DNA of 64,000 bases from Mytilus trossulus. Taxonomy: Eukaryota. The notes beneath the pieces are model-generated. The model did not search any database and was not told the origin of the DNA. It saw only the letters and a program-made list of their open reading frames with translations. The first letter of the stretch is position 1. Every line of letters starts with the position of its first letter. Position numbers and translations under genes: made by a program. The stretch covers positions 42,098,001-42,162,000 of the forward strand of contig NC_086373.1 of NCBI RefSeq assembly GCF_036588685.1, read 5' to 3'. Shown piece by piece: positions 4,425-59,163 of this stretch.

Positions 4425-4600
4425 TTCAAATGCTCTTGAACTTCGTACTTGATTCCAATGCTCTTCAACTTTGTACTTGATTCCAATGCTTTTCAACTTT
4501 GTACTTGATTCCAATGCTCTTCAACTTTGTACTTGATTCCAATGCTTTTCAACTTTGTACTTGATTCCAATGCTCTTTAACTTAACTTCGGGCTTGATTT
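4425..4600. repeat. 28-bp minisatellite (~6 copies), intron 4 of the pseudogene
   Basis: Unit TGATTCCAATGCTCTTCAACTTTGTACT. Confidence 0.9.
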
Positions 4601-9266: not shown

Positions 9267-9434
9267 CACCTTATCGCTATTCCCGGCTGACCCGAGAATC
9301 TGTCCGGCTTCAATCATTGACGTCATACAACAAACACGTTTCTATTGTGGCGTCAGTTATTTTGTATAATGACGTCGAATTTTTACGGGAACCTGTGTAA
9401 TGTCCAGTAATGGCGGACAAATAGCGATAAGGTG
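9267..9434. mobile_element. MITE with TIRs and TA flanks (Tc1/mariner-like)
   Basis: TA|CACCTTATCGCTATT ... AATAGCGATAAGGTG|TA. Confidence 0.75.
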
Positions 9435-28279: not shown

Positions 28280-31200
28280 ATGCCTGCTTATATGGGAGAT
28301 GATGGCATCTCACCTGAACAGGTAAGATAGAAATAACCTTTTTAATACATGTTATATTTTAATGTTAAAATATTGATTTGAATTCTGGGTGAAGGAATAA
28401 CACAACTCATTTAATTTGTTGAATACTCTTAAAGTATGGTCCGGTTTTAACATGTGAGTCTATTGAACGTAAGTGGTTGATTTATTGTACTGTATAACTG
28501 TTAAAACTATGTTGGGTATATATATATATATCTGTAAAAACACAAACTGGTTACCACTGAGTAGTCCAGTACAAACTTTAGGATTTAAATTTTGGGATTA
28601 GGGGGTTGTTTGGATGGGGTGAAGTTCGTCCCCTTGCTTCCTCCTAGGTTCAATCCTGTTGACGGAATATCAACATCCAAAATGTTATCCACAATGAAAC
28701 GGAAAAAGGAGTACCATAAGGCCCGACATAAGGCTTCGAATTTTTTCCCAAAGGAGTGATCTTCTATATTGTGTATCCTCTAAATATTGTAAATTTACTA
28801 GATATTGTTCAAGTGCTGGGACATGACCGTCTAGTAGATCAGCCAGAATTGAAAATCAAACCCCAATTTTAAATTATAGCCATAGGCGGATCCAAGTGAT
28901 CCAAGAAATCAAGTGATACAGGGGAAAGTAACATATTTTTCTATTGTTATTGTATTGCTTAGAAGCTGTCCCCACATGCTTCATTCATTTAAAAACACAT
29001 GTATAGGGGTATATACGTTTCCTTGGGCGACGTTTAGAATGAACTTTGCTTTTTTTTTGCCACATTTTGTACAAAATGGAAAAAAATATTAAAAATAATC
29101 TGGTGCTGTATAGTGACCACAAAATAGATATCAAATTAAATATAATTATTTGGCATTTAAACACGTTGATGATTGTAACACATTATTAAATTGAACGCGA
29201 CACAAACATGAATCTTTGTATAAATATAGAGAAATGTAAACAAAAACATGAAAAATTAAACTACCCAGTCTAATATCTTTAGTTCTGACCATTGCTTCAA
29301 ATTTGAAATGTTTGATTGATATATATGAATGACTTTTAATACATTGGGCTTAGGAAGCTGTGAAAAAGTAAATAAATTATATAATGGTCAACGTGAATAG
29401 GACATAATACAATAGATGTATAAAGTGTAATGGAGAAAAGGTAGTAAACTTATTTATGAACCCGTTGATAAAGAAGAATCATTCAGGAATATTGAATGAT
29501 GACATTTCAAATTATTATGAGATCATGTTTCAGACAAGTTGCATTATCTAAATGTACCTGACCATAAGTATAAAATCACTACGAAGATGTTTACCCAGAC
29601 AATTGCTTCTTAAATCAAGGTTCTGTCTAACTAAGATCAATATCCACTTTATCTCTTTTTGTTATGTACTTTAAGTAATTAAAACCCAGCATTAATTGCA
29701 TGTAGTGTAATGTGATAATGAAAATATCAATATTTAAATTGTAACATGGTAAGACTTTGTTCGTGCTGTTATTGTTTGCAGGCAACATCTGATAAGTACA
29801 TTTGTAAGAAATCGATGCAGGAGAAGGACAAAGTTTAGAATTATCTGTAACCCCTTCTTTCACTTACCATGCAGTCCGACGTACTCAATGAGTTCCGGTT
29901 GTATGATAAATATATTACCCTGTGTGTCGGTCTAGTACCAATCAGAATATTCAAAATTAAATAGTCAAAGTTAAGAACATGATGTATGATCGCCAATGAG
30001 ACAACTCTTTACCAGATACCACACGAGGTAGAAGTAAGCAAACTTAAAGTCACCATATGCCTTCAACAATGGGCAAACTCCATAACGTAGTGCAAGCCCC
30101 TTAAGGTATCTAAATGACAAATGTAAAACAATTCAAACGAGAAAAATAACTATATTCATGTAAAAAAAACGTATCGTCCTAAATAAAATAAGATAAGATA
30201 AGATATGTATAAGAGTTGTCGTTTTTTTATGGATATGTGTTTGTCGATGTGTTATTTTTAGGTAGCGTAAATTACATAAAATCCATGTTCAAATGGCACA
30301 AAGAAAACAAACCACAACATAAAGTTTCCATTCAAATCACTATGTAATCTGCTAAATGTATATCAGTTTGACAAACTAAAACAGTTGAACAATAATCCTA
30401 ATTCACTAACACAATATTATTCTCAAGTCTTCTAGCTTACTATCTCGACTCTATATATTCTAATTTCTCTCTCTCTCTTCCCTTTATAAACATAATAACA
30501 GGCGATACCCCGACAGTTCAAACGATAGGGTACCGGGCGGTACCTTAACGGTTTTAAAGAAGGGCTACCGGGCGGTACCTTGACGGTTTCAAAGATGGGG
30601 TACCGGGCGGTTCTTAACATACCGGGCGGTGTATTTAAATTAATTAGATATCGTTCAAATAAATAAGATACGGGGCGGTGCCTTTTTGAAATGTAATTTA
30701 ACCAAAATGTATTAAAAAGAAAGACATCTTACATAATTATATATTATACTGACTTAACCAAAATCGCTACAATAAGATTATCTTATATCTTATCTTATCG
30801 CACTGAATATGATTCTTATATATGGCACTGACCGTTTATCATTTATTCATTTTAGAAAAAAAAACACTTTTACTTGATAAAAGAAGAAACCATATGATGC
30901 TGAAAGTATTATTTAAACTGAACACTTGTCTATATTGCTTACATCCACTTGTATGAAATTTTGTGGATATAGTTGTATCAATGGCAATCATACCATATCC
31001 CCTTATTTTTTGCAGAACAAACTTTACTTCAGGAGTATCTATACTTGACTTAAAAACAAAATATCCGTATAACTTGATTTTCAATTCTGCTATTAACATT
31101 ACAGAGAAAAATCAATGATGCTTGTCTGGAAGGAAGTTTGAAAGATATTAAAGAATGTCTTGGACAGGATGGTGTTTCGCAATATGTAAAGGTATGTCAC

Positions 31201-37200: not shown

Positions 37201-40200
37201 CATTGAGAGATTACAAAGACATAGTTAAACTGATTCGAAAGTTCAGAGCTGGTCATCTATCGGTAAGTTTGGTGAAGATTCATATCAAATATATTTTTTG
37301 AAAGAACAGTTTGATATAAAGACAGGTATTCTAATTTTGATCTACAGCTAGTATTTGATGCAAGTTCCTAGTTCAATTTTTGTATTCTTTAGTATACCAT
37401 TATTTATCTGTCTGCTCCTTGTTCTTCCATTTATATTCGTTTAAACATTATCAAGCCTACAGCTACAATGTAATTTGCCCTACAATTTTGTTAATGGCAC
37501 ACAAGTGAAGAATTATGCGATATCCTCGTTCAGGCCAGAATATGAAAGTATTTATAAATGTTTTCTTTTTTAAATTGAAAATGTTTTTTCTTCCCTACTA
37601 AAACATTCTCCCAATCTAAAGAGTGTCCAATTGCTATGTTTTCTTTGACATAGAAAGCAAATCTAAAGTATATCTCTCATGGTCAATTCTTGTACTCGAA
37701 AGCAAAACCGTTAAAGCACGATTAACTATAATGATATCAACTGTTAACCTATTGTCAATTTTTATCAAAATACAATTTAAAGTACTAGTGTTTTATTTAT
37801 TTTATCGTATTATTATTCCATTTTGTACATTTTCAATTTTGAAATAGGATGAAACGGTAAGATAGTTTGTTATATTTCAACACCTTTATCTGCAGACTCT
37901 ATGTAAACAGTCATCCTGTGAGTGATTGATCTTACTGTATTTTATTTTCAGACGTATATTTTCACTTTTCAATACAATTCTACCCTGGAGTACCCTAAAT
38001 GAATAGCTGTCTTTCAGCTTATCATTTCAGCTAATACTGTGAATAACAATGTCATTGTAGGATGTGCGAAGAAAACCCACAAAAAAGACACTTTATATGC
38101 AATAACTTTCTTACACATGTACAAATTTCCTAGTATTATAAGTGAAAAAATCCTAATAAACTAGAATACTTATAGGACGACGACGAACCTTCTATTATTA
38201 CACCAACGGTAAGACATCGCACATGCATGATATAGAAACACACGTACAAGTTTCCTTTTACGTAATATATTTTATATTTTTAATTCAGCATGTACTGGTT
38301 TATTGGTTATATTATCAAAGATGTTGCATGGATGTATCATTCTGTACTTCAATCCTCCTGAAGCATTTTCGCTTGGTTTACATACACTTCCGCATGCAGC
38401 AGTTATATATATTTTACCTCATGCCAGCACTGTTTTCTTTGCTGATTAAATCTCAAATTATCCAAAATCTATGCACAATTGTTCTATATCAAGTGCTTAT
38501 TTTACTTTTTAATTGGAAACAGGCTTTTTTGCTTCTTTGTCAAATATTTTCTAGATTTGTTTTTTTTTGCAGCATAGATCGTGGCATGTTTCAAATTATA
38601 TTTTTTACTTATATATTTTTTTAAGAAACTTTATTTCAGCAGAGTCATATATTTCGACTTCATCAGTTTTTTGTTATTCTGTTTATGTCCCTTAGTTTTA
38701 AATGTTTAAGACGTTATACATACCAGTATATGGCTTCCTCTTTATACTTTACATAATAAACATTATTAAAGAAACTTATCGTGCTTACATAAATTGAAGT
38801 CATGTTGTTGTAAAACTGAATTACCTTAGAGTGATTAAGATGTTCTCTCCAGGTTCCCATGTGTCATAAAGCTCCTCACGTTTTAAAATGTTTTTTTTAT
38901 GGGTTGAGCGTTCCTGCTAAAGATAGACACAGAAAAGCGCTACAGACACATCAAAATTATTTTTATTTTCTAACGCTGGGTCAAAACCCATGATGGTAGA
39001 CTAGTATTATAAGTATACCTCGAAGGTATCATAATCACATCAAATTATTAAAGTATTGTTTTATTTTGAATTATTTAAATGACTTCAAATGCATTTGACA
39101 AGTCATATATATTTGCATGTTGTGGGTTCTTTTATGTTCTCAGATTCGAATTCTATTGTTTAATATTTTATCTGAAAATGGAATTTAAGACAAAAAAGGT
39201 TTATATCTTATTTCTCGAAATTATATATATATTCTGCAGTATCATTGAATGTGTTTCGTTTTGGCGTATCTTCTCTGAACCTGATATGATATTTACTGTT
39301 GATTAAGCTAGGCTTAGTCCTGCTATCAAGCAGATCAATATATTGTTTTTCCTTGTTTAGTTATAATCTTGCAAAATTGTAGACGAAAAAGAACGCTCAT
39401 AATACACCGGTAAGAATGGATGTTCACTAAAATTCACGTTTTTTATTTCTTTGTTTTAAAATTTCACTTTAACATAAAATTAATCAATTTTAAAAGGGGT
39501 TTTTGTTAAAGAGTTCTTTTGGTTTTTATTTCGGATGAACACTTTAAATTTTATTTTTTTATAATTCATTTTTTGCTTCATCAGAATGTGAATTATAAAT
39601 TTATGATAATGCTTTTTTTGTTAAAGTGAAAGATGATAAATCGACGAATCTTATTGTATTGACCTTATACCTTCAACCCAACTGTTCGCAACGGTAGGTG
39701 ATGCATGCACTGTAGGAGTCGCTAACAATGCCGACACACCCAGTATAAGTTCTTTTGGAACTCATGATACTCCTTTAGTTTTGTTGGTTACCATGAATTG
39801 TGTCCTATTTTGATTTTTGTTATCTATCATCAATTCCCTATTCCTTTGCACATTAAATTTAAATAATATTAGATTTGTTCTGCTTATTCAACCCATAATT
39901 GAGGTCATGTAAGCCGCAATTTCTGCGACGATGATATTTGTTCAACAAAAACAACAAAACGTAATTAAGGTTGACTTATTATATAATTTTGTAGGAGAAA
40001 AAGGAACAATTCGTGCCAGCGGTTAGACAAACATAGTCGTAATTGTTTTGTCCACTAACACGCATGTGAAATATTGACTAAAAAACCCATTAGTATATTT
40101 GTTATGTTAAAATAATTTTAATGTAATTTATGAACGATAAGCGAATAGACTACTTTCGAGTTCATCCGTCACCGGAAAAAAATTGTCAATTATACGCGCC

Positions 40201-43200
40201 TTTATCATCGTCATTTGTGCGTTTAGGGGCGTCGTCACTTCCTTCCAATGTTGAGCGAGTGGTTGGAAAACTATAATTCTATATTGTACGAATAATTCGG
40301 CAAATTGAATTCTCAAAATTGACAATCAACACTGCTGTCATTAGGGAAATGTCAGTAAGTACCTACAGAGCAACCATTATTTCTAGTTTATCCTGCACAA
40401 AGACGATCACTAAGACGCTTGATGAACGTAAATAGTGCAGGGATACAGGCGAGCCCCTCTATCTGGTAAATGACGTCATAAAGGCGTGTATAATTGACGA
40501 GTTTTTGCCGGTGACGGATGAACTCGAAAGTGGTATATTAAAACTGAATATGATGCCTGAGGCATCGTAAACGTATTAGATTGAATAATTGGCAACAATA
40601 ATTTGCTTATTTAATACTGCAGTGCTTACTTTAACGTCTTGGAATTGTGATATTATAAATTGCTTTTTAACTTATTGGCTTTTTTATTTACTTAAATATG
40701 ATATAGTTCATAGGTGATTTTAAAGTTTCGTTTACTAAATAAATAGTTATTTTATATGCAAATTAATTTGTTTTAAGAAAAACTTACTAAGCATATTTGT
40801 GTTGTTGAAAATAAAATAAAATGATGTTGTAGAAAGTAAAGAATCACGATACACCACGGAAAGCTTCAGTGGTAAGACAAATAATACACCCACTCGCACC
40901 CATCACATTACGAATTCAGTGTTTGATTACAACTTAAATGTTTGTTTTAATTTCTATTTGTTCCTTTAAACATGTTAAATGCACTTATTTTTAAAATCAT
41001 TTGTGCCAATAAAAACCCGTAAGAATAATGTTTTTTTTATAAAATGCGAAAATAGAGTAAGTGTCAACGAAAAGGTTACCCATCAACACACTTTCACTAC
41101 ATTATTTCGCACTTGACCAGTCGTTTTTTTGTGTTATTACATGTCATAATTCGAAGTTCATTTTTAAAGGGATTTTGAGTGAATCTAACAGAAGGCAAAG
41201 ATTAAGTCACGTCAAAAATTAGAAACCACAAAGAGAGAGTTAAAAATAACTTCAAGTTAATTTGGACAGGCAAATTGACCTAGAGGCGAGTGGCTATTTG
41301 TTTTTGAAAACTTATCCCTTAACCTATTTATTTGGAATACGAATGCACACTGAAAACATTAAAACAAACAGGAGCAATAACATTTAAAAGACAAAACTCT
41401 GTTAGTTCAATTAAACTGATCGGAGAATAAATAAACACAATAAAGTAAAAAAAAAAACAAAAAAAAAACACATGTGTATTGAAAATAACAAACGATCTTT
41501 TTTTAACAGGTGATAGTGTTTTTTTTTTATTTCTATTGATATATAATATGCACTACAGGGTAACCTAAAACACACAAAAAGAGTGTCTAATTGATGTATA
41601 CACTACATTATCTTTGGTCTTTTTTGATAACATACGTCTTGACTTGTATCGTTTGAAATTCTGCAATTAATTATATTATTACTAGTATTTGATGTCATAA
41701 TATATTTTGTCACTTGATTATCCAAAATATTTTGACAATTATATGAATAAGATTGTGGTCCTTTTTACAAAAAATATGAAGCTGTAATTAAAAAAAACAA
41801 ACATTTATCGGAATATTTGAAGTAAAAAAAAACTGTATTTAGCAACATTATAAACCTGTACCAAATCAGGGAAATGACCATTGTTATATCATCGTTCGTT
41901 TTTGTGTGTGTAACATTTTAACGTTGTGTTTCTGTTGTGTCGTAGTTTTCCTCTTATATTTGATTCGTTCCCTCCGTTTTAGTTTGTAACTCGGATTTGG
42001 GTTTTTTTTCTCAATCGATTTATGAATTTCGAATAGCGGTATACTTCTGATGTCTTTATTCATAAAACATACACCTGCTAAATAAACATATATGTATGTA
42101 AACTTTTAGAATAAACCAGAGACAAATACCCCACACAAGACCTTGGTATGAATTTTGAGAGTTAACATTCACTCCTCTGTTTGAGAAATCACCATAATCT
42201 ACGTTTGGTACTATTTTTATCGCACATCATAATCTACGTTTGATACTATTTTTATCAAACATGAAGTATTTGTACACTATGAGTTTAACCCTCATACATC
42301 TTCGTCTTCCTTAGTTGTATTAAAATATTTATGTTAAATAGACCACATAATGTCTTGAATAATAGTAAAGCAAGTAATTTAGGAAAGTTGTTGATATCGA
42401 CATGAATTACAGTGTCGTGTTGTGGCCTTTTATTGCCGACTATACGGTACGGGTTTCCTCATTTATGAAGGCCAATTGAGTGCCTTTAGTTTATTGCATT
42501 AATTTCATTTGAATTTTAGTGGATAGTCGTCCATTTTCAGTAATAGCACATCGCATTTTTGTTATAACCTAGATTAAATAATTCCATTGTATCTTATGAT
42601 CTCTTGTATTTTACCATATATGTTTTACTCATTTACAACGTATATAGTTTGTTCTGGCTATTTTATTTTCCAGTCGATACTGTGTTATTCCCTTCACTGA
42701 AATTATATTTAGATTTTGCCCCACGGAAATCTGGTACTAGATTTAATTTCAAATATACAATCAGATTCAAACATTGTTGTATTTATATGGTCGAGATCAT
42801 TCTGTTGCATTTTTATAAATCGCAACAATAGTTAAAGCATTTTTTTGTCAACAGATGGCACTGCCAAGAGAATAATTAGGCGTTACGCCGCACTTCTATT
42901 AAAAATTGGAACATCAAATAAATGATATATATACTAATATTTTAAAACAACTTAAGCTTATGATTTAGCTTGTTTTCAATAGAATTTGTTTTGTTTAATT
43001 TTGTATATTTTTTTTATTGAACGGATTGTTTGAGTTTTCTGTTATTTTAATTTTCATTGATTGTCTTCTTCGAGTAGTTAATTAAGTCAGTTTTAATGTT
43101 TTCCTGTTGTTTTGCTCATATGAGTATGTTTAGTTTAAAATAAAACTATATTTTAGGAAGCACTCAAGCGTGCAGTTCGTGTAAGTTGGGTTTGTTTTGC

Positions 43201-46200
43201 ATGTCATTGTATTGGTAACTGATGTTTGCCGTATTTATGCATTACTGATAACTACGTATGCGCTCATAGATTTTGTGACTCTTGAAAATGTTGCTTTAAC
43301 CATTTCATGCAACAGCGTAATCGACATTTTTGTCAACTAAAAGTATTGACAACCGTAGTTTTTACTTCTGTTTCAGCAAGAGAGAAACACATGATGAAAT
43401 GAAATAAAAAAAACTTTGATTTGGTCTAATGAATCATATGAGTCTTTATCGAGAAAAAACAATATGACTGTTAATCGTCGATTAAAAGAGGTTTTTTTAT
43501 ATAAAATTCAAATAAGTAATGGCTGTTCTTCAGTTAATTTTATCGTGTGGTTTTTTTATTTTGTTTTTTATCTAATTATTTTATTTATCAGATTTCACCT
43601 TTACTTTTTTGTTTATCATAACATAAGTGGAATGAAAGTATATTTGTTTGTTATGATTTCTTGATATTGTTTTCAGAGTGATCAATATTGTTTGTGTGTA
43701 CTAATGCGTAAAAGACAAAAACAATTTGGATATACGAACTGAAATGTACCAATGCTCTGATTTATTTTTACAATAATTGAAGTTAAATTTAGTAAGGTAC
43801 GAGAAAAGAAATACATAAATACAATCTACAACTTTCATTATTATTTAGGACGAACCTCCTGCGCCAGTTGTAGACCCTGTAAAAGAGGTAAAATGAAACT
43901 CATCCTTCTTGTAACGGTCTCCTATTATCTCACATATCTTGCTTTTAGCACAATAATATATCCAATCATATCCTTTTTCCGTATTATATCAACAACGATT
44001 TTATTTTAGTTCTGCAGATGGTGTTTCTCGGTAGCATTTTTTACTCACTAGGAAAGTTTTCTGTGCACAATATTCTATAATTTCACTTAACTTTATATTA
44101 CTTGATCCGCAATAAATGATATAAAATAAAATGGCATTAAAACCCTATGATAACATAGCAGTATTATAATTCAGGAACAAGTGCACTAAAAAAATCAAGA
44201 ATGTTTTTACTACCACTGACCGCTACTGGTTGACAATAGTTATTCGTTCATTGCTGTAAATTTAGTATTGACCTCATTCAAATGATACGTTTTGTCTACA
44301 AATTTCCGGTTTATAACACTTTTGACTTTCATTAACTAGATTTTGTTGTGATTTTAAGCCTGTTAGCTTTTTGTAATGTTCAACATTTGATATATTATTT
44401 TTTCCAAACTTTTGAACTTGAGCGTACCTGGTGAATTCTATTTTAGAAACAAATTTGATCTTTACTGAAATAATGACATGTGTGTTTGAGAGTACAGCTG
44501 TAATTTATAGGTCTATTAAGTATCTTTCAAAATTAAAACAAATGTTTAATATCACGATGGATTTGAATTAAAGTCGTGTTTATAGCGGATGAGAATGTTA
44601 TACCATTGAAGCATCGACTTAACAATACCCAATCGGTTAATAATTATATTTACTGTTATACTGTTTAGTGCTTTTGCATACATTCTTTCAAATGCATAGT
44701 TACAATTTCTATAATATTATACAATTAACTTATTTTTTCCTCATGTATATCATAGAAAACTCAATTGATGCACCAGGTAAGGACTTTTCAGTCTACTTAA
44801 TACATGTTGTTCGATGTTGTTCACAATTTACTTATTCTTAAATCAAATCGATATACCCGTTACACAGATATGTTGTCTTAATTTTTTTAAGTTTTCGAGT
44901 GAACTAACTGTGGCAAAATGATTAAACGTTTGCATAACGAAAGTGATGACATGTTTTGCTTTTCTTTTAAAAAGCAACCTTGTCAAAATGCATATTTAAC
45001 ATAACTCTTGAACTTGGGTTTGCAGTAATCGTTACACAGACTAATCTAAACTAACGTATTTTCTTTCATGTCATCATATAGCACAAATCTAATTAAGATT
45101 AGTTCTACGCACTTGCTCCTCGTTGTTTGAATGTCGCGCTCCCATGCGCGACATATAAACAACGAGGACCAAGGACAGAGAACTAATTATAATTAGGTTG
45201 CATATAGCACCCAAATGTCACGATAACAAAAAATATATTACGTATTTGCCACTTTGCTTGTGATGAAAATTAGAGCTGTAGCAAATGAAATAGTCATAAG
45301 TTTCGTAATATTTTACCGATTTTTTCAAACTAATTTCGGAAGATTGATTTGTTCATTGAAATTGAAGGAAAATGTTATAACGTTCATTACAGCTATAAAT
45401 TCTTTTAAATTTTAAATTCTATAAGCAATTATATAGATTTCTATTTTTTATAAACTTCTTTCTAGTATATGTAATATTTTTTTTCAGCTATAACATAGAT
45501 TAATTGACAAATAAAACAGTGGTAACATGCGTATTGTAAATGAAATAAAATCACCATACCATCATACAAATTTTATCCTTGTGACTAATATTATATACTT
45601 TTATTGTATTGATTCACTATCGGAATACCAAGGTTACTGACGATCATACTTTTATTTTCGGTGTAACTGTTTATTTGTTTGTCGTTCGTTGCTAAAATTT
45701 GTATAAGGTTTTATTTATGAAAAATGAATGGCTGATATTATTATCTTATGAATTGAAATCTGATGGTATGTTGATCGAAATCTTCGCATATCATTTTGTT
45801 AAGTTAGGTTTTGGTTTGATTTTAATGCACATCAACATGTATTATGAGCCACTGTTAACTGTACGTATCTAACTGCCGAGTTTTGACTAATTTGGTATTG
45901 CTTAATCTTAGTATTCAATAATCTGTTTTGGTAAACCACTGTTTTGTTTTTGTTTCCTACTGTTGTTATGTACAATCATTTGATATATTACTAGATCGTT
46001 AGCGGTGCTCTGTGGTTTTTAGTAGAGTTTTTTTTTTATTTTGTGTTTTGATCACCATTGTTTGTCTTTCAACCTTTAATCATTTTTCCAGTTTTGCTAT
46101 TGCGTTAAATTTGTCTTTTTATTTTTGACATATAATTTTGAATGTCTCTTTAGTATCTTTCGCCTCCTTTTATAGTATTTTGCAAAACATAAGTAAAAAA

Positions 46201-49200
46201 GTGACAGAAACTACTCTGTATAAAAGTATATTTTAAAAATAAATTATCTTACCAGTGAATATAGATTTTCTCCATTGGTTCTAACGGTACAATTTAATAG
46301 GTTTAATGCGGGTTATAAATAAACTCATCATAGATACCAGGGCTAAATTTTGGATAAACGATTGACATGAAAATAAACTCATCATAGATATCAGGACTAA
46401 ATTTAGTATATACGCCAGACGCGCGTTTCGTCTACAAAAGACTCATCAGTGACGCTCGAATCCAAAACAGTTAAAAAGGCCAAATAAAGTACGAAGTTGA
46501 AGAAAAGTTTACTTAATTTTTGTTTTCTTTTGAAATAATAGCCAATTAAAAAACAGCCTACGGTTACTACTTTGAAAGAAGATGAAGACGATGAAGATGA
46601 TGAAGAAGATGATATATTGGATGATCCTGATTTGGATGTGAATAAGCCAAACGAGGTAAAGATATATTTTGTTAAAAACCATTCTATTGCAATTAAGATT
46701 AAGCAGCTACATAGTTTCTCGAAAAGGAGACATATTTGTTATATTGTCATTGTGTTATATGTAATAAGAAACGCATGGTCGATGCTGGTGCTATTGAACT
46801 GTTAGCATCCGGGAGTATCATTACTCAAGTAGTCAATGGATGCCCGCTGGTATGGATAAAAAGCTAACTGCACAAGTGTTCAGTTGATAAAAACTACCAT
46901 TCCAATTCTCGTAGGGAAAGTTGACCCGAGATGGTTTGGGCTATTTGTTGGATCTCTTGGCTCTCATTTCTTTTTATTAAAACCGTTGCTGACGAAAATC
47001 AATCTTAAAAAAGATATCGGTATAAGAAAAGTATAAAAACTATTCCCCATTGCATGTTTGAGTTTTATGTTAATGCATGCATTTCCTTTTTTTCTTCATA
47101 AAGTGTCTTTGTTTTAACAGTGATATATATGTGTTTTTGTTCTGTCTGCTTTAGCTTGGATTGTATCCATTACACCAGGCAATACTACGCACAGATCCAG
47201 CAACAAGAAATAGACTCGTTTCTAACATTTTGGACCGCGGAGCTGACGTCAGTGCAAGAGCTCTAGATGTAAGCATGCAACTCATTATGTTTAGTAAATT
47301 AAGTGTAAAAAGAAAGTACATTTGTATGTTATTTTCAAAAAAAATTGCGTTCTTTCGGTATTTTTTTGGGAATCACTTTTTTTCAACTTGCCACCATATA
47401 GAGCTTGTCAAAGTATATATACATTTGTTTTCTTATGAGAAATTAAGTATAAAAACATACAGTCGTTTTGGTTTGTTTTTGTTTTTGTCACTGTATTTAT
47501 GTGATATGATATCCTTCATCCAAACAGATTAATCAGCAATTATACTGGAAATGTAGTCTATACACATTAATTGTATTTGTCTTAATATTGACATATCAAT
47601 ATTGAAGTATGTAGACTAATATACTGTAATGGAAATTCAAAAAAAGAGAGAAAAGATTTTTTTTTATTTATATCACTTGTTGAAAAATTAAAACTTTTAG
47701 ATTTGATTCACTAGGTTCAAATTCGGACAGATTAAAGAGGTAATAAGTATCCATTTCCTATTTCCGTCAGGACAAAATCATTCCTTATTTTAAACATCAT
47801 CCATAAGATTGTAAATTTTATTAAAATGTGTATTTGACTCAAATAATGGTGAAGCTGGTTGTTTTGTTATAAAAACTTATATTTTCCTTATTTGTATTTA
47901 TAATTACAATAATTACATGCATTATATAGAGTGAGGAACATGATGAGGTGAGAATATACATATGACCTTGGTGTTGGTCTTATTATTATTGCTATTAATG
48001 TCTAGCTTAGATTTTCGTAATTAGACTGCTGTATAAATTCTTATGCTTGTAGTATATTCTGTATACATTTATCTTTAAGCATGTTCATGTTTTGCATAAA
48101 CTATCTTTTACAACTTAGACGCAGTCGCTTTTCCATTCCAAGGCTTGATCGATATTGTAAAAAGTATTTTTTATTTAGTTACTTGCGTTTTCACTTTTAT
48201 AGAATACTTTATGCTCTTCAACTTTGTACTCGGTTGGCTTTATAACTATTTTGATCTGAGCGTCACTGATGAGTGTTTATGTAGACGCGTCTAGCGAATA
48301 ATTAATAATCATGGTACCTTTGATGACTATTTTCACCACTAGGTCGATCCCGCTGCTGGTGCACGTTTCGTCCTTGAGGGAACACCAGCCCAGTATTCAG
48401 CACTTCAATGTTGACATGAATATCAATTATATGGTCATTTATATAAATTTCCTGTTACAAAACTTTGAATTTTACGAAAAACTAAGGATTTTCTTATCCC
48501 AGCAATATATTACCGAATTTGGCATAACTTTTTGGAATTTTGGGTCCTCAATGCTCTGCAACTTTGTACTTGTTTGGCTTATAATATTTTGATTTGAGCG
48601 TCACTGATTAGTCTCATGTAGACGAAACGCGCGTCTGGTGTATCAAATTATAATTTTGGTACATTTGATAACTAATTAGATCGTGCAGTGAATATATAAA
48701 TACACAGCCGCACCCGGCCTTATTTACATGTTTAGTGTTTCAAGGATTGTTGGTACTTTTCTTGTTCGGATCTAAAATTAAAATAACGTCACATAATTTG
48801 TTGAATATACACTTTAAAGGAGGAACCAACCTCAACGTTTTGTTGAACGCTTTAAAAAAAATATATTACTCAGAAAGTTTTAGATTCTGAGAAGGAGGTT
48901 AACTTAAAGATAAATGTGTGATTAATGACAACGAAGTAACAGTTAATGTAATATAACTGGGTTGATACGGGCTGATAATCTCAGAGGATATCATAAGCTC
49001 AGTATTCACGGCTACATGGGTTATAATAAACTTGTCATTTTTTCTGAAATGATAGATTAAAAAACAATATTTCAGAAACTAAGGTTTCAACTCTCTAAGC
49101 TGATTTGACTATTCTGTTTTGATAATGTTTTATATAGCTTTTCGTGTGTTAAGTGTTAATACATACATCATTGATTTTCAATTATTTTGGTTAGAGCACT

Positions 49201-52200: not shown

Positions 52201-55200
52201 TAAAATAAGAAATTTGTATGCTTGAACTTTCCTTGTTACTTTTTCGTCGCTTCAAAATTGCCACCCCATGTCACACATAGCCGACACCCCGCATGTGGCG
52301 TTCTACACGGCGTGATTACGTTATACTGCATATGAGTGCAGTATAACGTAATCAGAGATCAATATTTTAATTAGATTGCTTTAGTTTGTATATTTGCATT
52401 ATGTTCAGCCATGTAGTTGTCTGTTTATTTTCGACATGAGTTTGAATGTCCCTCTGGTATCTTTCGTTTCTAATTTTTTTTACAGGACTAGTATAATACA
52501 ATAAAAGTGACAACCAAACAGTCATCTGTGTCTTTAGTATTATATATAAATATATATTGAAAAATTAACATGCTCTATCATTGCACATGTATATTTGAGA
52601 ATGATAAAGTCATAAAAGAATCATTTACTCTTTTTATTTTAATGACATTTCATTTGTTCATTTCCTGTGAAAGCTATTACCTAGAATAATGTTTATTAAT
52701 AAAAACAGTTAATCAGCATCATTATTATGCTAATAGATGCTAGATACTTCGGTGTGGGCTTTGCTCATTGTTGAAGTCCGTACGGTGACCTATACTTTGT
52801 TAATTTCTGTGTCATTTTGGTCTCTTTTGGAGAGTTGTCTCGTTGGCAATCATACCACATCTACTTTTTATAATACACATATATGTATTTAATCACTTAT
52901 ATTTAAGGGGTGTATGTTGAGAGTAGTAGTTGGCTAAAAGAGGACAGCTTGTACTCGCTTAAACATGAAACATTTAATTAATGTCAAAATCATAATTGCA
53001 ATATTTAATTTCATTTAACGATTTAATAAACTGAACACATTCTGATGTATTTGACAGTATTCTAGATTCAGATTCAATATTTTATTATAGTCTCACCACA
53101 TACAAACATAAAATGAGATTCACATACATAGATTTAAAACATTAAAACATTTGCATTGCATGTACCAATTCTATTTATTAAAAGATATATAACATCTTCA
53201 AGGAGGTAATTTCAGCTGTAATTTTCCGCTAAGTTTAAAGTAAAAAAAAAAAACATTTGTTAATAGAAGGAGAACCTTTTTCGGTTTTTTTATCGTTTTT
53301 TTTTTAATTTAATTTGAAACTTGTTTTGTTTTCTGTGCTGTTGTAAATTATGGTCTTTAAATATCTCTTATTGTGTAAATGGTTTCTCCGTTTAACAAGA
53401 AATAAACTTTATATTAAAGTTAAATAATATTTTGTAACTTTGATTGAATTTCAGGGTGGCAATACAGCACTTCACATGGCAGTAGCAAGAGACCAGATAG
53501 GAACCGTAAAAATAATTTTAGGCTACAAACCTTTATATGCAGTTCCAAATAATGTGAGTATAGTGATATATGATGTAATTGAACTACTTGTAGGTGCCAA
53601 ATTAATAACTTTTTTAAAATTGTAAATAAAAGATATTGAACTTTTCATAAAAAGTTTCTACCAGGTTAAGAAGTGTCATAGCGTAGTTCAAATCTTCTGT
53701 TCTCCATTCATTGATAATTACAATATGCGTTTTCAAATACGTTTGAATATCCATGGAGATAAGATAAACAACACTAGATTGAACCCAAAACTATTTACCC
53801 TCTCTGCAAATTTCAATGTCAATTGATTGACTGATATTCTATATGTCAAGTTAAATGGTGGTCGATAGAACATAACACTGAGATTATTCCTAACCATGTT
53901 CAATGGGGAGTTCAAATCGAAATCAAGACACAACAATACACAAAGTAACGAGACAGTACTGTCCAATAAAATCACACTCATACGAACATCGAACAATATC
54001 TTTTGGCAATGCGATATTCCAACAATATCATTATTTTTCTGTCAATTAGTCAGAATCAGCAGAAACACTGATCATGGGGAATAAAAGTGAAAAATGCACC
54101 AACACGCTGTAATATAGATAGTCATTAATAAACTATAATTCACATTTCAAACAGTGCTGTAGAGATTTATTTTCAGATTAAGGTAAATTATTAATACGTT
54201 TCTAACATTTTTTTATATATCTCAATTCATCCCATTGAGTTATAAGCAAACAACAATCATGCAACTATATTGAATCAAACATGTTTATGTCTAAACATAA
54301 ATAAGTTTATATATATATATCTTAAATTGTTTCTATCAACTGTGCAATTTAACGATATATTGGAATTCATTCTATGGACAGGAAGATCAAACCATTTTAC
54401 AAATTGCAGAATCTAACGAAAACGAAGAAATGATTGAAGTCTTAAAGGATTACGAAAAGACAATTCCACCGCCCGAGAAAACAAAAACTGATTTAAAAGG
54501 AAAAGAAAATGGAAAAGACAAAAATTGTGTCATCTCATAGTAACTTTTTTTTTGTCTGTTTTACATCAAGCATGGTTTTTTTAATAATTGAATTATAGAT
54601 TTAATACTAAGTCATATAAAAATACATATATTTGTTTTTAACTTAGTTAGCATTTGCATGTTTAAATGATACGTTGCATGACCTTTAACGTAAATCTTTC
54701 GTTTACACCGTTACTGTCCATGATACTTGTTACATGGCATTCCTTAGTTGAATTTTAACGTTACTTTTATAGAAAAAAAATAGTATATGGGTGACTAACC
54801 ATCGATACAGGTATTATGCAATATTAAGAGTATTTCAATGCGATTCGTTCACTACAACCAAACTTTCAGGAACGCAGTCATCCAATCACTTACCAAGATC
54901 GACTTGATCCTTAAAATCAACTTCATTTTTATAAGTTATTTAATATTAATAAATAACAGTCGGATTGCTGTTTAATTTTGGAAAATGTCAGCTTTAGGTT
55001 AACAAATATACTCATAGAACAAAATTGGCCATATATTCCTGGGTTATATTGTTTTCCTAGTAATTGATTTTGACAACATGTCTATTGAATGCATTCTAAA
55101 AATGATGTCCGTATTTTCAGAGGCTTTTGTTGTGTATTTAAAAGAAATCGTGGTTTTTGAATTGACCAACTTAAACGTTGACTCCTTGTTTGTTTGTACG

Positions 55201-57884
55201 TATAAAAATATAGACGACCAACCTTTTTTTATGATACTTAAGAAGTGAAACTGTATAAAGTGAAATGTATAAAAAGTATATTTACTTTTATTTTCCTGTT
55301 AGATAAGTTCATATTTTCTATTGTATGATACTGTTTTATGCTGTCAATAAGAAAATGTATTTATGTGTAGGAAGGTCAAACTGAAATGCAAATTGCAGAA
55401 AAACATGACAACAGTGAAATAATTGAGGCGCTTAAAGACTACGCAAAGACGTTGCCACATGAGAAAACTAAAACCACTCTCAAACCTAAAGACAAAATAG
55501 AAGACAAATCTTGTGATATATTATAGTAAATTGCTTGAAACAAATGGTTTTAACTAATGATTTGCGATTTCAATTTTATTTTCTTAAATATTGATTTGCT
55601 ATGTTTTATGTGTTAAATGTTTTAAATATATATTTTTTCTTGTAAAATGGTGTGTATTCAACATTTGTGAACTGGCATATTGAAGCGTGAACTAAAAATA
55701 TCAATCCTTACCCAAATAAAAGTAATATATATTTATTTTCTCCTGGTAAACTCTAAACAACATTGCATCGTATAAGAACAATTTAGTACATAAACAAACA
55801 TGCATTTAGTATAGTGGATGCCATAGACACGTTTAAGGTTTAGTTTTTTTTTCTATTTCAACGCATCTGTTAAAACGGTTTTCTTTTTCTCATAAAAGTG
55901 AAGTTTGAATTATAATAACACATAGAGCAGATACAAAAACTGTTGATTCCTTATATGAAAGCGTAATACAAGAATATAAGGTAATTACCTTTCTACGCTG
56001 ATAAAGGAAGATACAAGTATTTTTTTACAAATACCTATCAATATAATTATTTGTTGCATAAACCTAATGATTTGGTCATGTGTGTGCAAACTGTGAACTA
56101 ATCTGTAGAAAAAAAAACATTGGTTCAAAAATATTTTTATAAAAAAGAATAAGATGTACTAGTATCCTAATATACCACCCGGAATGGTTATGCTGTTGTA
56201 AATGTTTATCATCATATTCATGCTTTCTGCTCTTTGATCGGATGTTGTCCCTTTGACATATTTTCCATTTTCATTCTTAAGTGTTTGCACTTCAATTGTA
56301 AATTTCGAATTATCTCGAGGCAACGATATAATTTTTATCCTAGACAAAATTTTTAAACTAACTTCTCTTTTAATAACTGGTATTATGTGATTATCCCATA
56401 GCTAGAATGTAATTGAGCTGGTTGTTATTCCGTAAAACATTGTTAACTGTGGCGTCACAAAGGTTGCCAATGTATTTTCGAGGGGTTACAATCTACTCTA
56501 ACACTCTTTATGTGTTATTCAATTTATTAAAATGAATTTTCTGTAATTACTGTCTAATAAAGGCTCTCCCTTGACACCATTTGCGAGTATGGTCTTGAGG
56601 AAACAATGATAGTCCGTCGGAAGGGGACGATAAATGGCTGACCCGTGTTAAGAGAGAGCCATATCTCTTGCACGTTAAAGACACCCTTGTAGATTTCGAA
56701 AATGAGTAGGCTAATGCCGCTACAAGGCAGCACTCGCACCCGCAAAGTGGAAAGGGATTAATATAAGTTGCAATGTGATAGAGTAAATGTCTCCCTCTTC
56801 TTAAACAACTAAAGTCTGGCATTTTGACATGAATTATAATTCTTCTGATTAGATGTTTCCTTTGTGTCATGTTGCGTTCATATGTTATATTTACGTGATA
56901 GTAGTTTGTCGAAGGGTTTAAGATGACCATTCTATACCTACAAAGGGTCTGATTTCAGAGAAAGATTGAATAAACTCATAAATTTATATTTCTACAGTTT
57001 TAAATAAGCTTTTGGAATAAATGTTAAAAGTTCTGAATTGGTAAACGCATGATTAGCATTATTTAATTATTGTAATAATATTCCTCTTACATTTAATAAT
57101 CAAAACACGTTTCATAAAAGCCAAATAAACTGCTTATTTGACTTGCTTTTTACAAAAACACTAGTCAAGTCATACATAAGAGTAATGAATCTTTGATTCA
57201 AAGGTCTTTGGCCATTCGAAAAATTTTTTTTTTTTCTATTTTGGCCATTGCAATCTATACTTTTCTTCGACTGATTATATGTTGTCCCTTTTTATATTAA
57301 CCCTGTATTATGTATGTCGTGAAGTGTCATATTTTACAGTCACTAACCATATATTTTAAACAGTTTTTTTTTGTATTTAATTTGTCTTTATTAATACATA
57401 TGTGTAGGTGTTGCTTGCTGTGGAAAAAAATGCATGTTTATGGCCTTTTTTAATTATTTGAATATGTACTGCATGCGGTGTTCTTTTTATCTAAGTTTAA
57501 CACTAGTTCATTTCTGTCTATAATGATTGGAATTTTTTTCTTTCTTGTCCGTTGGACATAACTTATAATGTTTTTTTACTTCAACTACATGTTTCTGACC
57601 TCAACATCTACAGTGAAGACAAACACTTTGAGAATATTTATTGCATTCGTTTTTAATTAAATTTAAGCCTTTTCTTTCAAACATTCTTTACCTGATAAAA
57701 TGATTCAATGTAAAAGCTTGATGAGTGCAAACAAATATATTTTTTATTTTTGTAGGAAGGGAAAATGCCGAATGATATTGCTGAAGATAATGATAATTTG
57801 GATATGATGAAACTTTTAGAAGACTACAGAAGAAGTCAACTAAATCATGACAGGAACAAATCTGGATCTTGTAGTGTTCTATGA
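28280..57884 (+). CDS. Ankyrin-repeat protein with microexon linker, acidic tract and alternative CaaX C-termini (~520-530 aa)
   Basis: Core exons 28280-28321, 31105-31191, 32149-32370 (DGMMPMHIVA..GSDVD..EDTILHL), 33460-33588, 34401-34490 (KNGANVNYVNE), 35344-35451 (GAGAIHY..KADPNLRD), 36329-36448 (GDNCLNLA), 37173-37262, then microexons, then 46542-46655 (EDEDDEDDEEDD), 47155-47268 (GLYPLHQA..RGADVSA), 53455-53553 (GGNTALHMAV), then one of three last exons. All exons are multiples of 3 with AG/GT ends and open frames. An in-frame stop upstream of ATG 28280 supports that start. Confidence 0.88.
30188..30800. repeat. Element with (ATAAG)n/(CTTAT)n inverted ends and an internal 35-bp GC-rich repeat
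   Basis: ATAAGATAAGATAAGATAT at ~30188 vs ATATCTTATCTTATC at ~30785; TACCGGGCGGT at 30531, 30566, 30601 and 30620. Confidence 0.5.
31885..31910. repeat. (TATG)n microsatellite within a dispersed repeat
   Basis: Six consecutive TATG units. Confidence 0.85.
32413..33186 (+). mobile_element. Non-autonomous Helitron
   Basis: A|TCTGTAATACTAAAATA 5' end; 3' hairpin ACCCGTGA-TA-TCACGGGT (33160-33177) followed by CTAG|T; internal ~150-bp duplication (~32448 and ~32878). Confidence 0.8.
33826..33867 (-). ncRNA. Minimal type I hammerhead ribozyme, core intact, stem III palindrome altered
   Basis: Minus strand reads CGUCA-CUGAUGA-GUUU-UUUGU-AGAC-GAAA-CCCGCG-UC-UGGCG. Confidence 0.7.
34680..35215 (-). 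mobile_element. Dispersed repeat, non-coding end of the Penelope-like element at 58255-59163
   Basis: Closely matches 58255-58790; a shorter copy lies at 63790-63932. Confidence 0.8.
37848..44776 (+). CDS. Array of 8 phase-0 microexons encoding the inter-ankyrin linker
   Basis: 37848-37856 DET; 38176-38208 DDDEPSIITPT; 39383-39409 TKKNAHNTP; 39995-40021 EKKEQFVPA; 40833-40871 KVKNHDTPRKASV; 43157-43180 EALKRAVR; 43849-43887 DEPPAPVVDPVKE; 44756-44776 KTQLMHQ. Each has a TAG acceptor and a GTAAGA, GTTAGA, GTAAGT, GTAAAA or GTAAGG donor, length 3n and no stop. Confidence 0.72.
40144..40539. mobile_element. Non-autonomous TIR element (~70-bp TIRs, possibly Academ-like)
   Basis: AATAGACTACTTTCGAGTTCATCCGTCACCGG..GTCAATTATACGCGCCTTTAT vs ATAAAGGCGTGTATAATTGAC..CCGGTGACGGATGAACTCGAAAGTGGTATATT. 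Confidence 0.8.
45084..45200. mobile_element. 117-bp palindromic mini-foldback element with 9-bp TSD
   Basis: TSD CATATAGCA (45075-45083 and 45201-45209); the whole element is an imperfect hairpin centred on ATGTCGCGC-TCCCAT-GCGCGACAT. Confidence 0.85.
46413..46454 (-). ncRNA. Minimal type I hammerhead ribozyme, intact core
   Basis: Minus strand reads CGUCA-CUGAUGA-GUCU-UUUGU-AGAC-GAAA-CGCGCG-UC^UGGCG. Conserved core, stem II GUCU/AGAC, palindromic minimal stem III, stem I CGUCA/UGGCG. Confidence 0.85.
47930..47947 (+). CDS. Candidate 18-nt microexon (SEEHDE) between two ankyrin exons
   Basis: tatatag|AGT GAG GAA CAT GAT GAG|gtgaga; phase 0, purine-rich island in an AT-rich intron. Confidence 0.45.
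48211..48670 (+). mobile_element. Retrozyme-like tandem repeat (~340-nt unit) with two decayed hammerheads
   Basis: ATGCTCT(T/G)CAACTTTGTACT.. recurs at 48211 and 48551. The hammerhead at 48261 lacks GAAA; the one at 48599-48640 has CTGATTA instead of CTGATGA. Confidence 0.7.
49386..52378. mobile_element. ~3 kb foldback/MULE-like non-autonomous transposon
   Basis: TIRs ~49386-50114 and ~51615-52378; termini CAATCTAATTAAAATATTGATCTCTGATTAC; perfect 9-bp TSD CTTTAGTTT (49377-49385, 52379-52387); no transposase ORF. Confidence 0.92.
50359..50690. repeat. 70-bp tandem repeat (~4.7 copies) inside the foldback element
   Basis: TG(G/A)TGTAT recurs at 50361, 50431, 50501, 50571 and 50641. Confidence 0.9.
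54382..54540 (+). CDS. Alternative terminal exon A, ends CVIS* (farnesyl-type CaaX)
   Basis: cag|EDQTILQIAESNENEEMIEVLKDYEKTIPPPEKTKTDLKGKENGKDKNCVIS*; AATAAA at 54948. Confidence 0.85.
   Translation, partial: EDQTILQIAESNENEEMIEVLKDYEKTIPPPEKTKTDLKGKENGKDKNCVIS
55371..55526 (+). CDS. Alternative terminal exon B, ends CDIL* (geranylgeranyl-type CaaX)
   Basis: tag|EGQTEMQIAEKHDNSEIIEALKDYAKTLPHEKTKTTLKPKDKIEDKSCDIL*; paralogous to exon A; AATAAA at 55715. Confidence 0.85.
   Translation, partial: EGQTEMQIAEKHDNSEIIEALKDYAKTLPHEKTKTTLKPKDKIEDKSCDIL
56562..56773 (+). mobile_element. SINE fragment with Deu/Nin-type central domain
   Basis: GTCCGTCGGAAGGGGACGATAAA..GCACGTTAAAGACACCC resembles the Deu/Nin SINE core; no tRNA head visible. 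Confidence 0.55.
57756..57884 (+). CDS. Alternative terminal exon C, ends CSVL* (geranylgeranyl-type CaaX)
   Basis: tttttgtag|EGKMPNDIAEDNDNLDMMKLLEDYRRSQLNHDRNKSGSCSVL*; shares the EG..IAE..L.DY capping-ankyrin pattern with exons A and B. Confidence 0.82.
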   Translation, partial: EGKMPNDIAEDNDNLDMMKLLEDYRRSQLNHDRNKSGSCSVL

Positions 57885-58254
57885 TATTGTATGACATCTT
57901 CTAATCTAATGTTCTGTCATAGGCTGTAACAAGAGCTATTATATGGTGTTTTAACGTTTAACAAGAATCGTAATCATGCAAAAAATCACAATCCTGCTGA
58001 AATATTTACCCTTATTTAACTTCTAATCGTTTCAAACAAGCACCTTTTATCTTACTGCATGTAGCTCATAATTATAGAAGTAATTCTTTCATTTAATTAT
58101 TGCACAAACGAATTTTCTGATTTGGAATATGATTCTGATATATGATAAAGAAAATGTTTTTGATTACCAAAAATATGTATTGAAATACAAATGCATTTGT
58201 TTATTTATTGATACATTTGTTAATAACGTACCACAGAAAGGTAAATACACTTAA

Positions 58255-59163
58255 CTAAAATTGAGAATGGAAATGGGGAATGTGTCAAAGAGACAACAAC
58301 CCGACCAAATAAAAAACAACAGCAGAAGGTCACCAACAGGTCTTCAATGTAGCGAGAAATTCCCGCACCCGGAGGCGTCCTTCAGCTGGCCCCTAAACAA
58401 ATATATACTAGTTCAGTGATAATGAACGCCATACTAATTTCCAAATTGTACACAAGAAACTAATATAAAAATAATACAAGACTAACAAAGACCAGAGGCT
58501 CCTGACTTGGGACAGGCGCAAAAAAAGCGGCGGGGTTAAACATGTTTGTGAGATCTCAACCCTTCCCCTATACCTCACCAATGTAGAAAAATAAACGCAT
58601 AACAATACGCACATTAAAATTCAGTTCAAGAGAAGTCCGAGTCTGATGTCAGAAGATGTAACCAAAGAAAATAAACAAAATGACAATTATACATAAATAA
58701 CAACAGACTACTAGCAGTTAACTGACATGCCAGCTCCAGACTTCAATTAAACTGACTGAAAGATTATGATTTCATCATATGAACATCAGGCACAATCCTT
58801 CCCGTTAGGGGTTTAGTATCATACCATCATAACATATATGAGAAGAACATAACCCGTGTCATGCCAACAACTGTTTTTAGAATAATGTCTTTAGTTCCGA
58901 CGCAAAGACCTTATCAGGGACTCAATATTAACGCCAAAATATGCAATCTTTAATGACTTGACAACAGTATCGTAATTATATCCCTTCTTAATCAGTCTAT
59001 TTAAAGGTTTTGTAAGTTTCTGAGGTGAATACTGACACCTTTGTGCTTTATAAAGAATATTTCCATAAAAAATTGGATGTGAAATACCTGAACGTATCAA
59101 AAGTCTGCATGTTGAGCTATATTTACGAATGATGTCTTTATACCGATGATAAAATTTAGTAAA
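58255..59163 (-). mobile_element. 5'-truncated Penelope-like retroelement (ORF C-terminus and UTR)
   Basis: Open frame KFYHRYKDIIRKYSSTCRLLIRSGISHPIFYGNILYKA..LIKKGYNYDTV..* (stop 58891), followed by the dispersed repeat. Confidence 0.65.

What the first reader, a model, noticed from the sequence alone, without database searches (positions are those of the whole stretch)
54382..57884. Three duplicated alternative last exons, each with a different CaaX box: a candidate splice-controlled prenylation switch
Seen: after the common exon 53455-53553 come three paralogous phase-0 exons (54382-54540, 55371-55526, 57756-57884). Each has its own acceptor, encodes the capping ankyrin repeat plus a basic tail, and stops exactly 3 residues after a Cys: CVIS, CDIL, CSVL. 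All three frames are open and the Cys position is kept although the tails have diverged, which argues for selection on each. Established: CaaX with X=S is a farnesyltransferase substrate (transducin gamma ends CVIS) and X=L is preferred by geranylgeranyltransferase-I; KRAS and CDC42 use alternative C-terminal exons to change membrane targeting. Inference: one ankyrin scaffold yields a farnesylated isoform and two geranylgeranylated isoforms with different second signals (Lys-rich in A and B, RR..RNK in C). Asp at a1 in CDIL may reduce efficiency. I do not recognise this arrangement in any named ankyrin gene.
Basis: partly seen in the sequence, partly recalled or inferred. Interest (0 to 1): 0.9.

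Follow-up and report, generated by a model that had tools for sequence, protein, structure and literature searches.

The report
Mussel ankyrin gene, three CaaX endings
A mussel ankyrin-repeat gene really has three interchangeable last exons, each ending in a lipid-anchor (CaaX) signal; public annotation already lists the isoforms, but the idea that splicing picks the lipid is plausible, backed by conservation, and biochemically untested.

Summary
After the common exon 53455-53553 lie three paralogous phase-0 terminal exons: A 54382-54540 (CVIS), B 55371-55526 (CDIL) and C 57756-57884 (CSVL). Every exon of the gene matches Mytilus trossulus LOC134724754 at 100%.

**Already annotated.** The gene encodes a ~500-aa, bivalve-wide ankyrin protein with no published function. 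RefSeq and independent annotations of five Mytilus species list isoforms ending in A and in C. B appears only in M. californianus isoform X2, where it ends CDIS, not CDIL.

**RNA evidence.** In four transcript-like runs from sister Mytilus species, only the 53553->57756 junction (C) was seen. C also has the strongest acceptor and looks like the default ending.

**Selection.** A and B resemble each other only inside the coding exon. Their differences pile up at third codon positions (dN/dS about 0.24), so both were kept by selection.

**Wider pattern.**
- All 15 bivalve tails examined keep Cys at -4 and an aliphatic a2.
- Oysters also make one X=L ending and one X=S ending from one gene.

A splice-chosen farnesyl versus geranylgeranyl anchor is therefore plausible but unproven. 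The claim of "two geranylgeranylated isoforms" is not conserved. The claim of "different second signals" is not supported (net tail charge +2 to +3 in all three). I class it as a new variant of a known kind.

The parts
28280..28321 (+). first coding exon with the start codon (MPAYMGDDGISPEQ)
   Evidence: tblastn of M. trossulus isoforms P0250/P0200, 100% identity
31102..37262 (+). seven exons of the N-terminal ankyrin domain (31102-31191, 32149-32370, 33460-33588, 34401-34490, 35344-35451, 36329-36448, 37173-37262)
   Evidence: tblastn 98-100%; splice sites read; Pfam Ank hits
38167..43887 (+). alternatively used micro-exons of the disordered linker (38167-38208, 39995-40021, 40833-40871, 42110-42145, 43849-43887)
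46542..46667 (+). acidic linker exon (EDEDDEDDEEDD...DVNKPNE)
47155..47268 (+). first ankyrin repeat of the C-terminal block
47930..47947 (+). 18-nt micro-exon SEEHDE, flanked by AG and GT
   Evidence: present in the Mytilus proteins
53455..53553 (+). common penultimate exon (ankyrin repeat). Its GT donor at 53554 is shared by the three endings
   Evidence: RNA contigs in four runs
54382..54540 (+). terminal exon A: capping repeat plus Lys-rich tail, ends CVIS. Weak polypyrimidine tract; AATAAA at 54948
   Evidence: identical to the end of M. trossulus isoforms X1, X3, X5, X6, X8-X11 and X13-X16
55371..55526 (+). terminal exon B: duplicate of A (59% aa identity), ends CDIL. Weak polypyrimidine tract; AATAAA at 55715
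   Evidence: 82% identical to the end of M. californianus isoform X2, which ends CDIS
57756..58124 (+). terminal exon C: coding part 57756-57884 ends CSVL, and the 3' UTR reaches at least 58124. Strong polypyrimidine tract
   Evidence: joint 53553->57756 with GT..AG ends in four runs, and a 2219-nt contig runs on to 58124

Best explanation
This is the 3' end of Mytilus trossulus LOC134724754. The gene encodes a ~500-aa protein found across bivalves. It has an N-terminal ankyrin domain, a disordered linker built from optional micro-exons, a C-terminal block of 2.5 ankyrin repeats, and a short basic tail ending in a CaaX box. One donor (53553/53554) can be joined to any of three mutually exclusive last exons. 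Each exon brings its own version of the capping repeat, its own tail, CaaX box, stop codon and 3' UTR. C (CSVL) has the strongest acceptor and is the default ending in the samples examined. A (CVIS) and its old duplicate B (CDIL here) have weak acceptors and lie upstream of C, so using them requires regulated recognition plus polyadenylation before C is reached. From the established rule that the X residue sets enzyme choice, I infer that A-type protein is farnesylated and C-type protein is geranylgeranylated. RNA processing would then choose the lipid anchor, together with the cap surface and the 3' UTR. Shown: the exons, their selection signature, the annotated isoforms, the C junction, and the family-wide CaaX. 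Inferred: regulated use of A and B, actual prenylation, and the lipid class.
For: The exons and reading frames are as described. Every exon is 100% identical to M. trossulus isoforms. A-type and C-type ends are annotated in M. trossulus, M. californianus, M. galloprovincialis, M. edulis and M. coruscus, by RefSeq and by independent pipelines; a B-type end is annotated in M. californianus X2. The joint 53553->57756 occurs in all four runs laid. Polypyrimidine content at the acceptors is 0.78 for C, against 0.50 for A and 0.44 for B. AATAAA lies 408, 189 and 424 nt after the three stops. A-B DNA similarity stops at the exon borders. For A-B, dN 0.33, dS 1.36 and omega 0.24; the codon-position skew gives P<5e-5; neutral retention is 0.1-0.8%. 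All 15 tails from mussels, oysters, scallops, Dreissena and Potamilus have Cys at -4 and I/V/L at a2, with X = S, L or A. In Magallana gigas a short isoform ending CVIL and long isoforms ending CTIS are 100% identical in their shared parts, so they come from one gene. The rule that X decides FTase versus GGTase-I, and that GGTase-I depends mainly on a2X, is from PMC11304957. Asp at a1 does not block reactivity in the yeast Ydj1 screen: enrichment is 1.18 for CDIL and 1.71 for CDIS, against 0.087 for CDKA (PMC10320760).
Against: No junction to A or B appeared among the listed joints of four runs. Exon A had no contig at all in the three runs of organism A. The only contig over exon B starts 42 nt inside the intron, so it is unspliced. 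Those runs are contigs of sister species, their RNA status is a guess, and 41 joints were not listed, so this is weak evidence of absence. B-type ends were found in one annotated isoform of one species only. B differs from its M. californianus counterpart at 18% of residues, against 7-10% for A and C and 3% for the N-terminal domain, so its recent constraint may be weak. B's X residue differs between species. No lipid has been measured on any member of this family.
Confidence: 0.65

Rival explanations
1. Two working endings and one relic. A and C are used, while B is a fading duplicate of A that is spliced rarely or not at all in M. trossulus and carries no function of its own.
For: B is annotated only in M. 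californianus X2. No short expressed fragment of B exists in the protein collection. B is the fastest-evolving part of the protein (82% identity). Its X residue flips between L and S across species. It has the weakest acceptor. The only contig over B is unspliced.
Against: The frame, acceptor, stop position and Cys are intact in two species. The long-term A-B omega is 0.24 with saturated dS, and flanking similarity is gone. Neutral retention of these features is 0.1-0.8%. Six of the nine differences from M. californianus are conservative.
Confidence: 0.2
2. The endings are all prenylated, but lipid class is not what matters. The switch would instead serve the different capping-repeat surface (partner choice), the 10-residue difference in tail length, or the different 3' UTRs (mRNA localisation or stability, as for CDC42).
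For: Each exon replaces about 24 residues of the last ankyrin repeat, and A and C share only 29% identity overall. Net tail charge is alike in all three. B's X residue is not conserved. Each exon brings a separate 3' UTR with its own AATAAA. CDC42 isoforms are an example where the 3' UTR matters (bioRxiv 10.1101/366369, listed).
Against: The X=S and X=L pairing recurs in oysters despite a different gene layout, with matching motifs next to the Cys: DK.NC.IS and KS.[ST]C..L.
Confidence: 0.25
3. Annotation artefact. A-type isoforms exist only because gene predictors take the first in-frame exon after the common exon, and the real gene always ends in C.
For: Only C junctions were seen in four runs, and exon A had zero contig depth in three of them.
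Against: A has been conserved at 88-94% across five Mytilus species, with Cys and stop in place. A-type ends come from several independent annotation efforts. The selection signature on A-B holds. Oysters express an S-type end on an intron-free contig (P0279).
Confidence: 0.08

Closest known systems
CDC42 and KRAS alternative C-terminal exons (CDC42 prenyl CaaX vs brain CCaX; KRAS4A vs KRAS4B)
   Same: One gene uses mutually exclusive last coding exons, each with its own membrane-targeting tail and 3' UTR, so RNA processing sets how the protein meets membranes (papers listed; own knowledge).
   Different: In those genes the isoforms differ in the second signal (palmitoyl or polybasic), not in CaaX class. 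Here the X residue itself changes between S and L, there is no nearby second Cys, the carrier is an ankyrin scaffold rather than a small GTPase, and there are three exons.
Paralogue pairs with different CaaX class (GBP1 CTIS vs GBP2/GBP5 CxxL; farnesylated vs geranylgeranylated G-protein gamma subunits)
   Same: Closely related proteins are split into an X=S farnesyl type and an X=L geranylgeranyl type. The CVIS and CTIS boxes are the same as here (own knowledge; rule in PMC11304957).
   Different: Those are separate genes. Here the two classes are exons of one transcription unit.
PPP1R16A/B (MYPT3, TIMAP), prenylated ankyrin-repeat regulators of protein phosphatase 1
   Same: They combine ankyrin repeats with a C-terminal CaaX box (own knowledge).
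   Different: No conserved RVxF motif lies ahead of the repeats. No specific sequence relation was found, only generic ankyrin matches. The bivalve protein has two ankyrin blocks separated by a micro-exon linker.
Oyster orthologue (Magallana gigas 'ankyrin-1' isoforms, Ostrea edulis 'tankyrase-like' isoforms)
   Same: It belongs to the same family (45-47% identity), and one gene gives an X=L end (CVIL/CVLL) and an X=S end (CTIS/CTVS/CVIS).
   Different: In oysters the whole C-terminal block is triplicated in series. The L-type end is a read-through of the first cap exon, and the S-type end is distal. In Mytilus only the last exon is triplicated, and the S-type exon is proximal. Orthology of the tails is unresolved.

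Membership tests
CaaX-type prenylation substrates | Cys exactly four residues from the C-terminus | tested here: met
   CVIS, CDIL and CSVL each precede the stop. The same holds in all 15 bivalve tails.
CaaX-type prenylation substrates | aliphatic a2 residue and an X residue accepted by FTase (S, A...) or GGTase-I (L...) | tested here: met
   a2 is I, V or L in 15 of 15 tails, and X is S, L or A. The rule is from PMC11304957. CDIL and CDIS are reactive in the yeast screen.
CaaX-type prenylation substrates | covalent farnesyl or geranylgeranyl on the Cys | not testable with these tools
   This needs peptide assays, metabolic labelling or mass spectrometry.
Alternative last exons | one upstream donor and several downstream acceptors in the same phase, each exon with its own stop | tested here: met
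   The donor follows a complete codon at 53553, and AG precedes 54382, 55371 and 57756.
Alternative last exons | own polyadenylation signal behind each exon | tested here: inconclusive
   AATAAA lies at +408, +189 and +424, but such hexamers are common in 31% GC DNA and no 3' ends were mapped.
Alternative last exons | spliced RNA for each junction | tested here: inconclusive
   The C junction is present in four runs. A and B junctions are not among the listed joints. A and B are present only as annotated isoforms.
Ankyrin-repeat proteins (Pfam Ank clan) | significant matches to ankyrin repeat models | tested here: met
   Ank_2 scores 70-77 bits and Ank 59-64 bits, above the cut-offs.
PPP1R16 / MYPT family | RVxF PP1-binding motif N-terminal to the repeats, and specific sequence similarity | tested here: not met
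   The only hit is RIAF inside a repeat in Mytilus; oyster, Dreissena and scallop have none. No MYPT chain is among the best 60 PDB matches.

The most novel reading that the evidence does not exclude
Pteriomorph bivalves have kept, on one ankyrin scaffold gene, both a farnesyl-type (DK.NC.IS) and a geranylgeranyl-type (KS.[ST]C..L) CaaX ending that RNA processing selects. They kept them either since before mussels and oysters split or by convergence. The class of lipid anchor would then be a regulated, splice-level decision rather than a fixed property of the protein.
Probability: 0.35. Interest if true: 0.75.

Novelty: new variant of a known kind. Interest (0 to 1): 0.55.

Why it matters
Alternative C-terminal exons that retarget a protein are known from CDC42 and KRAS. 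I found no described case where splicing swaps the CaaX class itself, farnesyl type against geranylgeranyl type (literature searches). If confirmed, this gene would be a natural system for asking what the two isoprenoids do differently on the same protein. It would also give a first functional handle on a conserved bivalve family that is currently mislabelled 'notch-like', 'ankyrin-1' or 'tankyrase-like'. It is also a caution: the exons are already in RefSeq isoform lists, so what is new lies in the interpretation, not in the gene model.

Tried and rejected
I could not fetch the loci of other Mytilus species or oysters, so there is no codon-level dN/dS for exon B between species and no oyster exon map.
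- Read laying and the look-up of sequencing runs allow one call each, and both were used.

**Searches that came back blank**
- A search for short expressed fragments of exon B found nothing.
- A search with the B tail of P0166 found only itself.
- Scans of metagenome contigs for A-like or A/B-like exons in other mytilids found nothing.
- The protein atlas and the PDB sequence search gave only generic ankyrin matches.
- Literature searches found no paper on this gene.

**Analyses that did not resolve**
- A tree of the cap exons groups A with B (99/98 support) but does not resolve how A/B, C and the oyster caps relate. Ancient origin versus convergence of the S-type and L-type tails stays open.
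- dS for A-C and B-C is saturated and not computable.

**Readings rejected**
- I rejected a relation to PPP1R16/MYPT.
- I rejected a polybasic difference between the tails.

- I did not build or search a joined spliced protein or a junction pattern. Full-length proteins came from the exon-by-exon search instead.

Full report
**Observation.**
The common exon 53455-53553 (GGNTALHMAVARDQIGTVKIILGYKPLYAVPNN) ends on a complete codon before a GTGAGT donor. Three downstream exons each follow an AG, start in phase 0 with GAA G.., and stop three residues after a Cys:
- A, 54382-54540, ends ...KDKNCVIS.
- B, 55371-55526, ends ...DKSCDIL.
- C, 57756-57884, ends ...SGSCSVL.

A and B are clear paralogues (phmmer E 1e-13, 59% identity). 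C is more distant (E 0.001-0.01). There is no fourth copy in the window or elsewhere in the 1.3-Gb assembly. Pfam ankyrin matches run about 22 residues into the terminal exon, so each exon supplies the last repeat of the C-terminal block.

**What gene it is.**
I searched exon by exon, and did not build a joined model. The 74-residue exon 32149-32370 found a 505-aa Mytilus californianus protein at 97% identity, plus orthologues in other bivalves. A follow-up search with that protein listed dozens of isoforms:
- LOC127720098 in M. californianus.
- LOC134724754 in M. trossulus.
- LOC143078216 in M. galloprovincialis.
- A M. edulis gene and M. coruscus models.

M. trossulus isoforms match every exon of the window at 100%, so the window is M. 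trossulus. The gene runs from 28280 to at least 58124. The protein has four parts:
- an N-terminal ankyrin domain;
- a linker of optional micro-exons (noted earlier as s1-826790) followed by an acidic stretch;
- 2.5 C-terminal ankyrin repeats;
- the tail.

The family occurs in oysters, scallops, Dreissena, Potamilus and Solemya. Its automatic names (notch-like, ankyrin-1, tankyrase-like) are only ankyrin echoes. PDB and atlas searches give generic ankyrin matches. No paper on the gene was found.

**Are the three exons used?**
In annotation, yes:
- A-type ends (NCVIS or NCLIS) and C-type ends (SCSVL or SCSIL) are listed for all five Mytilus species. The listings come from RefSeq and from independent genome projects.
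- A B-type end appears in one isoform, M. californianus X2. There it reads ...KSCDIS, not CDIL.

For direct evidence I laid four transcript-like runs on 52700-58600. These runs are Logan contigs and their RNA status is a guess. Their contigs encode CSIL, so they come from sister species.
- All four runs carry the joint 53553->57756 with GT..AG ends. One 2219-nt contig continues upstream into the gene and downstream to 58124.
- No joint to 54382 or 55371 is among those listed.
- Exon A has no contig in the three runs of organism A.
- The only contig over exon B (55329-55712, depth 2) begins inside the intron.
- Contigs drop rare variants and 41 joints were not shown, so absence is not proven. 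C is nevertheless clearly the main ending in these samples.

The splice signals agree with this. C has a 78% pyrimidine tract, against 50% for A and 44% for B. Each exon is followed by an AATAAA. This is the usual layout of a default distal exon and regulated proximal ones.

**Selection.**
- A-B DNA similarity (69%) begins and ends at the exon borders, and the flanks are unalignable.
- A-B nucleotide differences are 13/13/25 by codon position. dN is 0.33, dS is 1.36 and omega is 0.24.
- Thirty of 51 residues are identical, against 19 expected by random placement (P<5e-5).
- A neutrally drifting copy would keep its acceptor, open frame, stop position and Cys in only 0.1-0.8% of simulations at that divergence, even ignoring indels.

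Both A and B were therefore coding exons for most of their history.

More recently B has moved fastest. Identity between M. trossulus and M. californianus is 82% for B, 90% for A, 93% for C and 97% for the N-terminal domain. B's X residue has also changed.

**The CaaX pattern across bivalves.**
Fifteen terminal tails from mussels, oysters, scallops, Dreissena and Potamilus all have Cys at -4 and I, V or L at a2. X is S, L or once A. Two tail types recur:
- DK.NC.IS, in Mytilus A and in the distal end of oyster long isoforms (CTIS, CTVS, CVIS).
- KS.[ST]C..L, in Mytilus C, the oyster short isoform (CVIL, CVLL), scallops (CIIL, CTIL) and Dreissena (CTLL).

In Magallana gigas the short and long forms are 100% identical in their shared parts and diverge right after ...EEQRNAER, so they come from one gene. 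Both oyster ends sit on intron-free contigs of 1.3-2.1 kb, which points to expressed mRNA.

The oyster layout differs from the mussel one. In oysters the whole block is triplicated in series and the L-type end is proximal. A tree of the cap exons does not resolve orthology. The S/L pairing is therefore either ancient or convergent, and either way it argues that having both endings matters.

**Mechanism.**
Established rule: the X residue sets enzyme choice. FTase accepts about half of the residues, including S and A. GGTase-I takes L (sometimes F, I, M, V) and depends mainly on a2X (PMC11304957).
- On that rule, A should be farnesylated and C geranylgeranylated.
That worry is softened by the yeast Ydj1 screen, where enrichment is 1.18 for CDIL and 1.71 for CDIS, against 0.087 for CDKA (PMC10320760).
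- The tails have no second Cys and have similar net charge (+2, +3, +3).
- The exons also swap about 24 residues of the capping repeat and the whole 3' UTR. Lipid class is thus one of three things that change together.

**Verdict.**
The feature is real, under selection and conserved. The splice-controlled prenylation switch is a reasonable hypothesis with good comparative support for the A versus C contrast, weaker support for B, and no biochemical support. The gene model itself is already public. I rate it as a new variant of a known kind (alternative last exons that change C-terminal membrane signals), of moderate interest.

Noticed in passing
window 49412-50120 and 51609-52316: A ~710-nt inverted repeat (576 nt at 95% plus 130 nt at 92% complementarity) encloses ~1.5 kb inside the intron just upstream of the common exon. 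It is probably a transposon with long terminal inverted repeats, and it could fold into a large hairpin in the pre-mRNA.
   Followed up: partly
window 52700-52896, 56443-56836, 58216-58600: Contig depth here is thousands-fold above the neighbouring sequence in all four runs, with many internal joints. These look like dispersed repeats that are abundant in transcript assemblies. The one at 58256 onwards lies just past the 3' UTR of exon C.
   Followed up: no
window 2311-19182, + strand: Open frames resembling ADP-ribosylglycohydrolase occur twice, for example EYRHKQIVDDFHRSRWEDGDWTDD at 2311-2439 and a near copy at 13329-13607; another such frame lies at 19051-19182. This suggests a tandemly duplicated upstream gene.
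   Followed up: no
window 63234-63710, - strand: A 158-aa open frame has transmembrane-like segments and an NPxxY-like motif (NPLVDPFIY). It is probably the last exon of a rhodopsin-type receptor gene on the opposite strand.
   Followed up: no
P0246 (M. galloprovincialis isoform X32): One annotated isoform ends ...AVPNNI, directly after the common exon, with no capping repeat and no CaaX. This may be a fourth, anchor-less ending.
   Followed up: no
window 47930-47947; oyster P0025 vs P0037: The 18-nt micro-exon SEEHDE lies between the two C-terminal repeats. In oysters the matching position alternates between NEDHDE and QATGKSILK, so this loop is also splice-variable.
   Followed up: partly
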